Below are positions 52,801 through 55,800 of a stretch of 64,000 nt of DNA, piece after piece. Numbering within the stretch: the stretch's first letter is position 1; the number at the start of each line of letters is the position of its first letter. This DNA is from Orbicella franksi (lineage: Eukaryota). The DNA lies in contig OZ116704.1 of NCBI GenBank assembly GCA_964199315.1, positions 12,400,001-12,464,000 on the forward strand, in the 5' to 3' direction. Both the position numbers and the translations under genes were made by a program. The notes below the pieces were generated by a model. That model saw nothing but the letters and a program-made list of their open reading frames with translations, had not been told where the DNA came from and did no database searches.

Positions 52801-55800
52801 AAATTTTCTTTTTTCAACCAAATTAAAGTTCATTATTTAAGGTAACATTTTTCATGAAAATGAAAATAAAATATTAAAACGTACGTGAGTTATTGGGATA
52901 AAGAGATTTTTAATAAACCATAATAAACCATCAAGGTGTCATAGGGTGCATTTCTTTAAGAAAATCCAAGATTGGATTCTTAAATCTGAAAGAATCCAAA
53001 AACAGATTTTGCATTTCTTTACTTAACAGATCAATCCAAGATCTCTCAGATCATGATTTGTCAAAGAAACCGAAGAATCCACTCTGAAAGTGGCTGAGAG
53101 TGAGAAAATGCACTCAGCAATGACTGCCTTGATTTCTTCGGTGCAGATGCCATTTTAGCACATGTGAAAGCCTGCATTCCCCAGTTCTTTGAAAATGTTC
53201 CAGACGTTTCATGATACTTCGATCTACTGCTTCCATCGCAAGAGGGAAATGAAAACACATCTGAAATCCCAGCATCTTTACTACAACTCAGACGTTTGAT
53301 ATTTTTGCAGGATCTTTCCATTTTCTTTTAGCCTTCTTGTCAAAAGTAATGGTAAAGCAAGATGAGAGTAGGCGGCCAAAGATTGGCCAGTAGCCCACTG
53401 TTTAGTCCTAGCTGCTACTGGCCCTTGTTGCCAAGCCCTTATGTATATCACAATAATTCATAAAAAAAGAGATTGATGGCCCCTAATAATGAGATAGCAA
53501 AGATGGGAATTTTAAAATTGATTCCTGGGTGAAAATATATCAACTAGAAAACCTGCACACAAATAAATCCAATTTTGAGTTACATTGTATTTGACTTTAA
53601 CATGACCTCCACTGACCTGGTAATATGAGAAGCATCCTGTAATAATAACAACTGTGGCAAGAACTATCCCAAGGTAAAGCTGAAAAAGTGAAAGAAAGAG
53701 GTTCACCTCCAGGGTTAAATGCAGTGTTACCCATTTGCACAGCTAGGTGGAAAGAGACAATGTGAAAGTAAACTAGTGTCTTGTTCAAGAGCACAACAGA
53801 TTGATCCACACCTTGGCTTATGATAATTTCTATCCAGGGTCCACAGCAGTAACCATTTAGTGTGGCCATCATGTCCCCTGATTTAAAATGTGGCTACATG
53901 GGAAATTGAATCTCTTTTACAGTACACATACTTTCTGTATTGTATGCATGATTTGGACAGTAGACATGCCGAGTCTGATTGGCTTATAATTTGCAAATTT
54001 GAGTATGGAATGGAGCACAAGTGAGCATAAAGAGTTTGGCATTACAGAAAACCTAGTAGGAATAACCATGGTTTCAAATTGCAGAACAGCACTTTGCAAA
54101 GCAAATAAGAGGAACCAAAAGTATGGTAATAAAAGATCAGTACAGATTAAAACATGGGCAAAATTGGACGCAAGGTTGTTTCTGTATAAGCAAGGCTTGT
54201 GGACGGCAATTCAATATGAAAATAAGCCAAAAATAGCAAACATTGTTTCATGATTGCCAGGAATGTGAAGGACAGATTTATTTCAATAAACACAAAAGCA
54301 GACCTTCACATAGTACATTATTTAAGCCTGAAATACAGTCTTCAGAATGCTTCTAATCACCTTTCAAAAAAGTCTAGTTAGTTATGTACAACAAAAGTTT
54401 CAAGAGAAAAATCTGACCATGATCAAGACAATTTGGGCATGACCTCCTTAAACAGTTTCTCAAAATTTTTGTAAGGTTTATTTTTTATAATTATTACTCA
54501 CATCATCCTTATCTGGTTCCTCCTGTTGAGACACCTTGATTCCGTAAGTGATGAAGCAAAGAAGGGCTCCAATCCACAACAGCATGGCAAAGCCACTAAA
54601 CAGCTGTTTACAGAACTTCACCCACTCAGGGGTAGTGGGTGGTGGTGTCAGAGCATTAGGACCATCACGCGCATGCAGTTCATCAGCCTTTTCTTGTGTA
54701 TGACCCTGCAAATGTAAATTACGATGAAAAGGAGCAAAACAAAGTCAGCATTAAGTTGCATTAAGTCAGCACTGTTAATCTTAATTAAATTACAGTCTGA
54801 TTATTTGCACTAAAAGATGTTATCTTTCAGAACAAATAAACGAAAAAGACATTGAGATATACATATTTGATTTTAGTTTCACAAAGAAACTTTAATATAA
54901 ACTGTTGCAAAGACCCAGTCTCAGTGATACATGTATATTTCACATGACAGACTGTGCTTTACCATATTTCCAAACATGTACAAGTCTCGATTGTTCAAAA
55001 TGTAACAAACAGAGGAGTATTTTTGACAAACTTCAAAGTGTTTGCCAATGTGGTCAACACTGTCTTGAGTGTTTTGTTTATCTTAACAATCAAAACTAAA
55101 ACTTAGGAGAAAACAGAGAAATTGCATTGAAAAAATCAATGCTAATGAAGATCAGATATCCAAACACCTTCACATTGTGGTTATGATTTCCTTTCTTTAC
55201 ATGTAAACTTGATGAATTATAATGATTTTGAGGGGTGCAGTATCCAAACCCTTGGCCTTCCTGATTGTAATGAAGTGTTCTGTCATACATAGAGTGCTAG
55301 CTGTGACCAGAAATTTCTGCAGGCAGTGGCAACCACTGAAAATTACCATCTGGTGTAGTAGTCCTGGTCTTGCTGGCTAGTCTTGAGATTTTTCAAGGTT
55401 CAAATAGAAGCTACTGAGCAGTGATTTCATGTAGCATAGTTTATTTATCTCTGCAAGGTGGTTCTAGCTACTTACCAAGTCTGAGGATGAAAGTTGAAGT
55501 AATATGTTACAAATTCAAATTAAACAACAGGCTTCAATTGCGTTAAGACTGGATAATGCTATCCATTAGATAAATCACTATCCAGTTGCTGTCCTGTGTA
55601 TAGGTGTTAACAAAACAAACCATGTTATTTGCTGGATAGCAGTTTTTCTGGTGGATAGTGTTATCCACCTTTCGAACAACCAGAGCCTGAACAGTAACTT
55701 TTGTGTGGACTGCATTTTTGTACGCTGCGAAACGAGGTTAAGGACTACCTTATTATTTTAAATTCTGGAACTCTTGAGAGAAGAAGTGAATGGTGATTTT

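What the first reader, a model, noticed from the sequence alone, without database searches (positions are those of the whole stretch)
54502..54537. Rodent-like charged borders on the M1-M2 loop of paralog B (K111, D119, D122)
Seen: codons AAG (54537-54535), GAT (54513-54511) and GAT (54504-54502) give [20 protein letters not shown]122 is the last codon before an intact GTGAGT donor. Known: Q111R+N122D gives large ouabain resistance and Q119D contributes in toads. K111 is chemically analogous to R111, which is an inference.
Basis: partly seen in the sequence, partly recalled or inferred. Interest (0 to 1): 0.8.

Follow-up and report, generated by a model that had tools for sequence, protein, structure and literature searches.

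The report
Coral sodium pump with charged ouabain-site borders
One of two neighbouring sodium-pump genes in a stony coral carries, at the mouth of the site where heart-glycoside toxins bind, the same kind of charged residues that make the rat pump drug-resistant. It probably binds such toxins poorly, but nobody has measured this and no toxin is known that would explain it.

Summary
On the minus strand, AAG (54537-54535), GAT (54513-54511) and GAT (54504-54502) encode K111, D119 and D122 in pig alpha-1 numbering. D122 is the last codon before a GTGAGT donor, and RNA-seq reads use that donor.

The genome is a stony coral, not a vertebrate. The window holds two tail-to-tail Na,K-ATPase alpha genes:
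- A on the + strand has L111, N122, E312, L793 and T797.
- B on the - strand has K111, D122, V312, Q793 and I797.

B is intact, spliced and transcribed. Its catalytic and ion-binding motifs are canonical. Orthologues in two other coral assemblies (dS about 1.2-1.3, dN/dS about 0.03-0.04) keep K111, an acidic 119, D122, Q793, I/V797 and a non-acidic 312.

Published sheep and mouse alpha-1 mutagenesis gives 60-fold (Q111K/N122E), 1000-fold (Q111R/N122D) and 63-fold (T797I) ouabain resistance. B is therefore most likely a low-affinity pump next to a mostly canonical copy (only the mild L111 change), like rat alpha-1 or the frog and insect resistant/sensitive pairs.

Not shown: any change in affinity, any selecting toxin, and orthology with the sea-anemone K111/D122 form. 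The charged borders alone do not block palytoxin.

The parts
54502..54705 (-). Paralog B exon encoding the end of the N-terminal segment, M1 and the whole M1-M2 (H1-H2) extracellular loop. Loop sequence: K111-VSQQEEP-D119-KD-D122.
   Evidence: splice joints in RNA-seq.
54535..54537 (-). AAG, K111 (the Q111 position of pig/sheep alpha-1).
54511..54513 (-). GAT, D119.
   Evidence: The B orthologues L001 and P0004 have E119.
54502..54504 (-). GAT, D122, the last codon of the exon.
   Evidence: joint 54502|53679.
54496..54501 (-). GTGAGT splice donor.
   Evidence: It is used in RNA reads.
53617..53679 (-). Next exon of [22 protein letters not shown] (start of M2).
48123..48509 (-). B exon with TGES, M3 and M4. 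The M3-M4 loop reads GYELLVAF, so residues 310, 312 and 314 are L, V and F where paralog A has W, E and V; the E312V codon is 48191-48189. I315, F316, G319, V322, A323 and E327 are kept.
   Evidence: offset 205 against 7d91_A.
40258..40412 (-). B exon with M5, the M5-M6 loop and M6. It reads IPQPLGIIT, which gives L793Q (40308-40306), T797I (40296-40294) and V798I. F783, F786, S775/N776/E779 and D804/D808 are kept.
   Evidence: offset 758 against 7d91_A.
37328..37462 (-). B exon with the M7-M8 loop. R880 is kept, D884 is E, and the SYGQEW beta-subunit motif is kept.
34818..55867 (-). Paralog B as far as it lies in the window: 22 exons, 2949 nt, 982 codons, from EWHKISLDD... to ...QETYY-stop. 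All introns are GT..AG and there is no internal stop. The first coding exon (...LEDLKQELEM, seen in RNA reads) was not found in the window.
   Evidence: loose end at 55868; no match.
12542..29964 (+). Paralog A: 21 exons from DWHTISLEE... to ...KETYY-stop, intact, 79% amino-acid identity to B. A Lys-rich upstream exon ends at 12466.
15166..15369 (+). Paralog A M1-M2 exon. Loop L111-IATEEEP-P119-KD-N122; L111 codon is 15334-15336 and N122 codon is 15367-15369.

Best explanation
[quoted passage not shown] B lies tail-to-tail with a second copy, A, which is canonical at these contacts apart from the mild L111 change.

B keeps all the catalytic and ion-binding machinery of a normal sodium pump. 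What has changed is the outer mouth where cardiotonic steroids bind:
- a basic residue at 111 and acidic residues at 119 and 122 on the loop borders;
- E312 lost in the M3-M4 loop;
- L793Q and T797I in the M5-M6 hairpin.

Inferred mechanism: in rat alpha-1 and in engineered sheep alpha-1, charged side chains at both loop borders lower the affinity for ouabain-type steroids. Loss of the Thr797 hydroxyl lowers it further. B should therefore be a low-affinity (insensitive-type) isoform and A a higher-affinity one.

Shown here: the sequence, the splicing, transcription, conservation and purifying selection.
Inferred: the drop in affinity.
Unknown: what selected for it, if anything did.
For: - Residues and numbering.
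- B is intact with GT..AG introns throughout. Its exon 1-2-3-4 junctions are seen in three polyA RNA-seq runs and one metatranscriptome.
- Canonical motifs are present: [60 protein letters not shown] and ...ETYY.
- The best solved-structure matches are Na,K-ATPase alpha-1/3/4, ahead of H,K-ATPases.
- Orthologues in two other coral assemblies (L001+L004, L003) are 92-93% identical in protein, with dS 1.19-1.31 and dN/dS 0.033-0.036. They carry KVSTIEEPEKDD (L001), IPQPLG(I/V)VT (Q793, I/V797) and T312.
- In L003 an A-like gene again lies tail-to-tail downstream.
- A against B has dS 1.6 overall and pS 0.59 in the loop exon, so the split is old and the loop exon shows no recent conversion.
- Mutagenesis values tabulated in PMC13704064: Q111R/N122D 1000x, Q111K/N122E 60x, Q111K/N122K 5000x, N122D 10x, T797I 63x (mouse OR6 cells), T797V 79x, L793P 24x, L793N 2.8x.
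- Xenopus Q120R/N131D pumps are half-inhibited only at about 200 uM ouabain (PMC2894553).
Against: - No binding or inhibition measurement exists for any coral pump. I found none in the paper library.
- The exact K111/D122 pair is not among the tabulated mutants.
- Substitution effects depend on the protein background, and coral alpha is only about 75% identical to the mammalian test proteins.
- Positions 111 and 119 are labile in invertebrate pumps generally: E, L, K, R, T, D and V all occur at 111. Paralog A itself has L111.
- Conservation of K111 and D122 among B orthologues is not special, because about 92-93% of all B residues are conserved.
- B differs from the vertebrate consensus at roughly 5 of 20 core contact residues. 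That is about its overall divergence, so no statistical enrichment is shown.
- No cardiotonic-steroid source relevant to corals is known to me.
Confidence: 0.6

Rival explanations
1. Ordinary isoform divergence with little or no pharmacological consequence. The charged borders and the other changes at the mouth tune ion access, voltage dependence, turnover or beta-subunit pairing of a tissue-specialised pump. Any change in steroid affinity is small or incidental.
For: [quoted passage not shown]
- In frog pumps Q111R and N122D reduce ATPase activity unless compensated (bioRxiv 10.1101/2020.08.04.234435).
- All extracellular loops of A and B are diverged, for example 58% identity in the M7-M8 exon.
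- Position 111 varies widely among invertebrate pumps.
- No steroid toxin source for corals is known.
Against: - Five independent positions that each raise ouabain resistance when mutated in mammals are changed together in B and not in A.
- T797I is the exact substitution selected by ouabain in mouse OR6 cells.
- A pump with I797, Q793, V312, K111 and D122 that still binds ouabain with high affinity would contradict every tabulated mutant.
Confidence: 0.25
2. Adaptive target-site insensitivity to a reef toxin that acts on the sodium pump, such as palytoxin-type polyethers from zoantharians or dinoflagellates, echinoderm saponins or marine steroids. B would keep cells alive when A is poisoned.
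For: - The arrangement, one mostly canonical and one altered copy side by side and kept for a very long time, mirrors the resistant/sensitive pairs of toad-eating frogs and milkweed insects.
- A review names molecular changes in the pump as one possible but unexplored basis of palytoxin tolerance in reef animals (PMC11511052).
- Similar K/R111...D122 loops occur in sea-anemone-like sequences (Actinia tenebrosa XP_031556114).
Against: - Palytoxin still opens Xenopus pumps carrying the R111/D122-equivalent pair (PMC2894553). The loop borders alone are therefore not a palytoxin defence.
- No toxin exposure, expression pattern or physiology was tested here.
- The paralog is old and conserved in corals of different lineages, which does not point to a specific ecological driver.
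Confidence: 0.12
3. Artefact or dead gene: an assembly error, a pseudogene or a contaminant.
For: The first coding exon of B was not found in the window.
Against: - 22 exons with no stop and canonical splice sites.
- Spliced polyA reads.
- dN/dS of 0.03-0.04 against orthologues.
- The identical loop in independent assemblies.
- Fourteen DNA or untyped runs labelled coral metagenome or with coded organism names (A-C) hold all sampled words of the stretch.
- RNA reads running upstream of 55868 carry a proper ...LEDLKQELEM exon. The missing exon therefore simply lies beyond the window.
Confidence: 0.02

Closest known systems
Rat/mouse Na,K-ATPase alpha-1 (R111, D122), the classic naturally ouabain-resistant isoform, and the engineered sheep alpha-1 border mutants of Price and Lingrel
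   Same: A basic residue at 111 and an acidic residue at 122 on the borders of the M1-M2 loop. P118 and D121 are kept. The pump is otherwise canonical. More canonical (rodent: more sensitive) isoforms coexist in the same genome.
   Different: Lys instead of Arg at 111. There is an extra acidic residue at 119 and Lys at 120. B also carries E312V, L793Q and T797I, which rat alpha-1 does not. The organism is a cnidarian, and no measurement exists.
Leptodactylus frog ATP1A1 R/S tandem paralogs and the milkweed-bug (Oncopeltus) alpha-1A/B/C copies
   Same: Adjacent duplicated alpha genes, one with a canonical steroid site and one with an altered site. Differences persist although some exons show signs of exchange between the copies (exons 10 and 13 here).
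   Different: The coral pair is far older (dS saturated, 79% identity) and tail-to-tail rather than head-to-tail. The selecting toxin is known in frogs and bugs and unknown here. Some functional papers of the frog/tetrapod series are flagged as retracted.
Mouse OR6 cell line alpha-1 T797I; sheep alpha-1 T797A/V
   Same: B has exactly I797; its orthologues have I or V.
   Different: Those are laboratory-selected or engineered single changes. In B the change is natural, fixed and combined with changes at 111, 122, 312 and 793.
Hydra vulgaris Na,K-ATPase alpha (Canfield et al. 1992), the cnidarian reference pump
   Same: A cnidarian alpha subunit of the same family.
   Different: It is reported as ouabain-inhibited (PMC11193536). 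I could not obtain its sequence with these tools, so its residues were not compared.

Membership tests
Na,K-ATPase alpha subunit (P2C-type ATPase) | Phosphorylation motif CSDKTGTLT, plus TGES, MVTGD and [17 protein letters not shown]. | tested here: met
   All are present in B and A.
Na,K-ATPase alpha subunit (P2C-type ATPase) | Cation-site residues: E327 (PEGL), S775/N776/E779 ([13 protein letters not shown]) and D804/D808 (CIDLGTDM). | tested here: met
   There are no Lys substitutions of the Artemia alpha2KK kind.
Na,K-ATPase alpha subunit (P2C-type ATPase) | Closer to Na,K- than to H,K-ATPase; beta-subunit motif SYGQ in M7-M8; C-terminal ...ETYY. | tested here: met
   For four exons the PDB hits are led by Na,K-ATPase alpha-1/3/4, with H,K-ATPases lower. 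DSYGQEW and QETYY-stop are present.
Na,K-ATPase alpha subunit (P2C-type ATPase) | Complete open reading frame with a start codon. | tested here: inconclusive
   There are 982 codons in the window. The first coding exon is seen only as an RNA loose end (...LEDLKQELEM) and was not found in the window.
Cardiotonic-steroid-insensitive pump of the rodent alpha-1 type | Charged residues at both borders of the M1-M2 loop (111 and 122). | tested here: met
   K111 and D122. They are conserved in coral orthologues.
Cardiotonic-steroid-insensitive pump of the rodent alpha-1 type | Measured low ouabain affinity (IC50 or Kd raised at least 10- to 1000-fold). | not testable with these tools
   Needs heterologous expression and an inhibition or binding assay.
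Resistant/sensitive paralog pair (Leptodactylus and Oncopeltus type) | A second copy in the same genome that keeps the canonical site. | tested here: met
   A has N122, E312, L793 and T797. Its only change is L111, a mild change known from snakes and danaine butterflies.
Resistant/sensitive paralog pair (Leptodactylus and Oncopeltus type) | Known exposure of the animal to a pump-directed toxin. | not tested
   No evidence was found in the paper library for corals.

The most novel reading that the evidence does not exclude
Hexacorals (stony corals and perhaps sea anemones) have kept, for hundreds of millions of years, a dedicated toxin-insensitive sodium pump beside a sensitive one. This would be the oldest and first non-bilaterian case of target-site insensitivity at the cardiotonic-steroid/palytoxin site. 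It would imply a long-standing pump-directed toxin pressure on reefs, or an endogenous ligand that only the A-type pump senses.
Probability: 0.15. Interest if true: 0.8.

Novelty: new member of a known kind. Interest (0 to 1): 0.5.

Why it matters
The ouabain site is usually described as conserved throughout animals, hydra included (PMC11193536). All well-studied exceptions are bilaterians that make, eat or sequester cardiotonic steroids.

A conserved cnidarian isoform with charged loop borders, no Thr797 and no Glu312 would extend natural site remodelling to a phylum with no known steroid exposure. It would also give a natural, deeply diverged pair of pumps for asking three questions:
- what the site is for;
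- which reef toxins act through it;
- how far the mammalian resistance code transfers to distant backgrounds.

There is a practical point too. Ouabain is used as 'the' Na,K-ATPase inhibitor in coral physiology. If B is insensitive, ouabain-insensitive fluxes in corals may have been wrongly assigned to other transporters.

Tried and rejected
1. Full-length cnidarian homologues could not be fetched. The representative search with the 68-aa exon returned almost only exon-sized fragments. The length rule of the search for homologous proteins and the ban on typed long sequences prevented a search with the spliced protein, so that tool was not used.

2. Orthology of the sea-anemone K/R111...D122 forms with coral B is unresolved.
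- With the loop columns included they join at SH-aLRT 91.
- With the 12 loop columns masked they do not join.
- The AU test does not reject a clade (p = 0.37), and only 56 columns were available.

3. The Actinia contig ends after the loop exon, so its M5-M6 residues are unknown.

4. B's first coding exon was sought with the RNA-derived sequence at up to 3 mismatches and with a peptide pattern. It was not found in the window.

6. An enrichment test of B's changes among contact residues was considered. It is not significant by count (about 5 of 20 in B against 1 of 20 in A), so the argument rests on the identity of the substitutions, not on their number.

8. The Rfam scan gave only one tRNA hit.

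9. Moore et al. 2009 on toad pumps is not held in the library.
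Full report
**What is at the coordinates.** Read on the minus strand, 54705-54502 is a 204-nt exon in phase 0. It has an AG acceptor and a GTGAGT donor. It encodes [69 protein letters not shown] phmmer search of the Protein Data Bank aligns it to Na,K-ATPase alpha-1 (E about 1e-29). Against the pig chain 7d91_A, which uses mature numbering, the offset is 54. AAG 54537-54535 is therefore residue 111, GAT 54513-54511 is residue 119 and GAT 54504-54502 is residue 122, where pig has Q, Q and N. D122 is the last codon of the exon, and the next exon (53679-53617) begins LYLGIV.

**Reads and cDNA.** All 14 DNA or untyped runs listed hold every sampled word of the stretch. Several are labelled coral metagenome and the rest carry coded organism names. 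Earlier notes of the scan also call this genome a stony coral. I laid three polyA RNA-seq runs and one metatranscriptome on 50900-56899. The results were:
- The 54502|53679 junction has 16 reads in X23, 4 in X24 and one contig in X15.
- The 55808|54705 junction has 3, 10 and 6 reads in X21, X23 and X24, plus one X15 contig.
- The 53617|50980 junction has 9 reads in X23, 2 in X24 and one X15 contig.
- All three junctions have GT..AG ends on the gene strand.
- An RNA contig covers 54530-54704 without a single difference.
- No variant within the exon is listed, but 69 weaker differences were not shown.
- Reads running upstream of 55868 continue into sequence encoding ...LEDLKQELEM. That sequence was not found in the window, so B's first coding exon lies beyond position 64000.

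**The two genes.** Motif scans and an all-against-all comparison of open frames, followed by manual splice-site modelling, give two convergent genes. A 128-N gap (31088-31215) lies in the 4.9-kb spacer between them.
- Paralog A is on the + strand at 12542-29964 (21 exons, plus a Lys-rich exon ending at 12466).
- Paralog B is on the - strand at 55867-34818 (22 exons, 982 codons in the window).
- All introns are GT..AG and there are no internal stops.
- Both genes carry [30 protein letters not shown](K/R)[14 protein letters not shown](T/S)[16 protein letters not shown] and a C-terminal ...ETYY. Both are ordinary sodium pumps in their catalytic and ion-binding parts.
- They are 79% identical in protein. 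dS is 1.6 (saturated) and dN is 0.15, so the duplication is ancient.
- B has one extra intron, after ...KKMVPQ.

**The steroid site, residue by residue.**

| Region | Paralog B | Paralog A |
|---|---|---|
| M1-M2 loop | K111, V112, S113, Q114, Q115, D119, K120, D122 | L111, I112, P119, K120 |
| M3-M4 loop | GYELLVAF: W310L, E312V, V314F | canonical: W310, E312, V314 |
| M5-M6 hairpin | IPQPLGIIT: L793Q, T797I, V798I | canonical: L793, T797 |
| M7-M8 loop | D884E | not compared |

B keeps C104, Y108, E116, E117, P118, D121, L125, I315, F316, G319, V322, A323, E327, F783, F786, I800 and R880. A is canonical at 122, 312, 793 and 797.

**Conservation.** The representative search found exon fragments with the identical loop [12 protein letters not shown] in at least three other coral sequence clusters (P0001-P0003, 93-96% identical). 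It found KVST(T/I)EEPEKDD in two more distant ones (P0004 and P0008).

I walked along the P0008 contig (L001+L004) and fetched a second assembly (L003).
- Both carry clear B orthologues. Every exon is closer to B than to A.
- Protein identity to B is 92-93%, dS is 1.19-1.31 and dN/dS is 0.033-0.036.
- They have Q793 and I797 or V797, and T312 instead of E312.
- They keep the extra intron.
- In L003 an A-like gene lies tail-to-tail about 3 kb downstream, so the arrangement is conserved as well.

B is therefore an old, strongly constrained, functional gene, and the altered states are stable features of its lineage. One caution applies. Because about 92-93% of all B residues are conserved, conservation of K111 and D122 is not in itself evidence of special selection on them.

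**Sea anemones.** Actinia tenebrosa XP_031556114 (P0052) has the loop KASTEEEPSKDD. Two unnamed fragments have KVSTEEEPSKDD and RVSTQEEPSQDD. With the loop included they join the coral B group (SH-aLRT 91). With the loop masked they do not join, and an AU test does not reject a clade (p = 0.37, 56 columns). Whether this reflects one origin in Hexacorallia or convergence is open.

**What the substitutions do in tested pumps.** The table in PMC13704064 (references checked) gives these fold increases in ouabain resistance.

| Substitution | Test system | Fold resistance |
|---|---|---|
| Q111R/N122D | sheep alpha-1 in HeLa cells | 1000 |
| Q111K/N122K | sheep alpha-1 in HeLa cells | 5000 |
| Q111K/N122E | sheep alpha-1 in HeLa cells | 60 |
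| Q111R alone | sheep alpha-1 in HeLa cells | 10 |
| N122D alone | sheep alpha-1 in HeLa cells | 10 |
| T797I | mouse alpha-1 of ouabain-selected OR6 cells | 63 |
| T797V | sheep alpha-1 in HeLa cells | 79 |
| T797A | sheep alpha-1 in HeLa cells | 67 |
| L793P | sheep alpha-1 in HeLa cells | 24 |
| L793K | sheep alpha-1 in HeLa cells | 8.8 |
| L793N | sheep alpha-1 in HeLa cells | 2.8 |

Xenopus pumps with the R/D pair are half-inhibited only at about 200 uM ouabain (PMC2894553). The exact K/D pair is not listed. The statement about Q119D in toads could not be verified: position 119 appears only as the permissive A119S site of insects, and the toad paper is not held. Two 2022 papers of this field are flagged as retracted in the library, so I rely on the older mutagenesis.

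**Most likely mechanism.** B is a normal Na+/K+ exchanger whose outer vestibule binds ouabain-type steroids poorly, for three reasons:
- charged side chains at both loop borders;
- the missing Thr797 hydroxyl;
- the missing Glu312 carboxylate.

A would be the higher-affinity copy. I put about 60% on this. The main rival (about 25%) is that, in the coral background, these changes chiefly tune ion access, turnover or subunit pairing. The R/D pair is known to halve turnover and change leak currents, and in frog pumps it lowers activity unless compensated. An adaptive toxin reading (about 12%) is attractive because reefs contain pump-directed toxins, and a review lists pump changes as an unexplored basis of palytoxin tolerance. 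However, palytoxin still opens R/D pumps, so the loop borders alone cannot be a palytoxin defence. Artefact or pseudogene is excluded for practical purposes.

**Comparison with known systems.** It works like rat alpha-1, and like the resistant member of the frog (Leptodactylus) and milkweed-bug paralog sets. Membership in the Na,K-ATPase alpha family is met on all sequence criteria tested. Membership in the 'steroid-insensitive' class is met for the sequence criterion (charged 111 and 122) and untestable for the defining functional criterion.

I found no paper on cnidarian pump paralogs or on coral ouabain sensitivity. A recent review states that the site is conserved from hydra onward. I rate the finding a new member of a known kind, in a new phylum and far older than the known pairs, with moderate interest. 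The sequence evidence is solid and the function is readily testable. The pharmacology is inferred and no ecological driver is known.

Noticed in passing
window 22004-22190 / 44156-43970 and 24670-24771 / 41776-41675: Two exon pairs (P-domain, and the [10 protein letters not shown]... exon) differ less at synonymous sites between paralogs A and B of this genome (pS 0.29 and 0.22) than B does from its orthologues in other corals (0.40-0.47). This points to local gene conversion between the copies. The M1-M2 loop exon shows none (pS 0.59).
   Followed up: partly
window 16112-16418 (+) and 56302-56001 (-): A repeat of about 300 bp is shared by an intron of A and the first in-window intron of B (similar in all reading frames, so similarity is at the DNA level). 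It has very high RNA word depth (about 8,000-10,000 in X15 at 55900-56299). It is probably an abundant transposon/SINE or a highly expressed non-coding element.
   Followed up: no
window 24841-25076 (+), 26019-26155 (+) and 41485-41238 (-): Intronic blocks are conserved between the two paralogs and duplicated within A (up to 100% over 16 codon-equivalents). The Rfam scan at gathering threshold found nothing in them.
   Followed up: partly
window 19559-19632 (+): A tRNA-like sequence lies inside an intron of paralog A (Rfam tRNA 34.9 bits; ARAGORN calls tRNA-Ser(CGA)). It is only 74 nt long, which is short for a serine tRNA. It may be a tRNA-derived repeat.
   Followed up: partly
window 50929-50162 (-): B has an intron after ...KKMVPQ that A lacks. 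It is 768 nt here but only 90-97 nt in the orthologues L003 and L004.
   Followed up: partly
window 12350-12466 (+): The Lys-rich N-terminal exon of A (...[17 protein letters not shown]) has no in-frame ATG, and the ATG at 12354 is out of frame. The start codon must lie in a further upstream exon, or the model is incomplete. The intron to the next exon is only 75 nt, whereas the corresponding intron of B is longer than 8 kb.
   Followed up: no
window 29363|29936 (+) and 35119|34846 (-): The predicted last splice junction gives ...PGCWL... in both paralogs, where vertebrate pumps have ...PGGWV.... The Cys is also seen in L003 and L004, but the junction was not checked in RNA.
   Followed up: no
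window 56000-62000: The upstream part of B's long first intron is GC-rich (0.47-0.52 against about 0.39 elsewhere) and strongly T-rich on the + strand (AT skew down to -0.28). Several read joints and loose ends there suggest transcribed repeats.
   Followed up: no
window about 37490-37520 (-): A (GTT)n microsatellite lies directly upstream of the acceptor of B's M7-M8 exon.
   Followed up: no
protein P0006 (A-like fragment from another assembly): An A-type exon fragment from another cnidarian-like contig reads GIQVATEEEPPSDY before the donor. That is Tyr at position 122, so the loop borders also vary in the A lineage.
   Followed up: no
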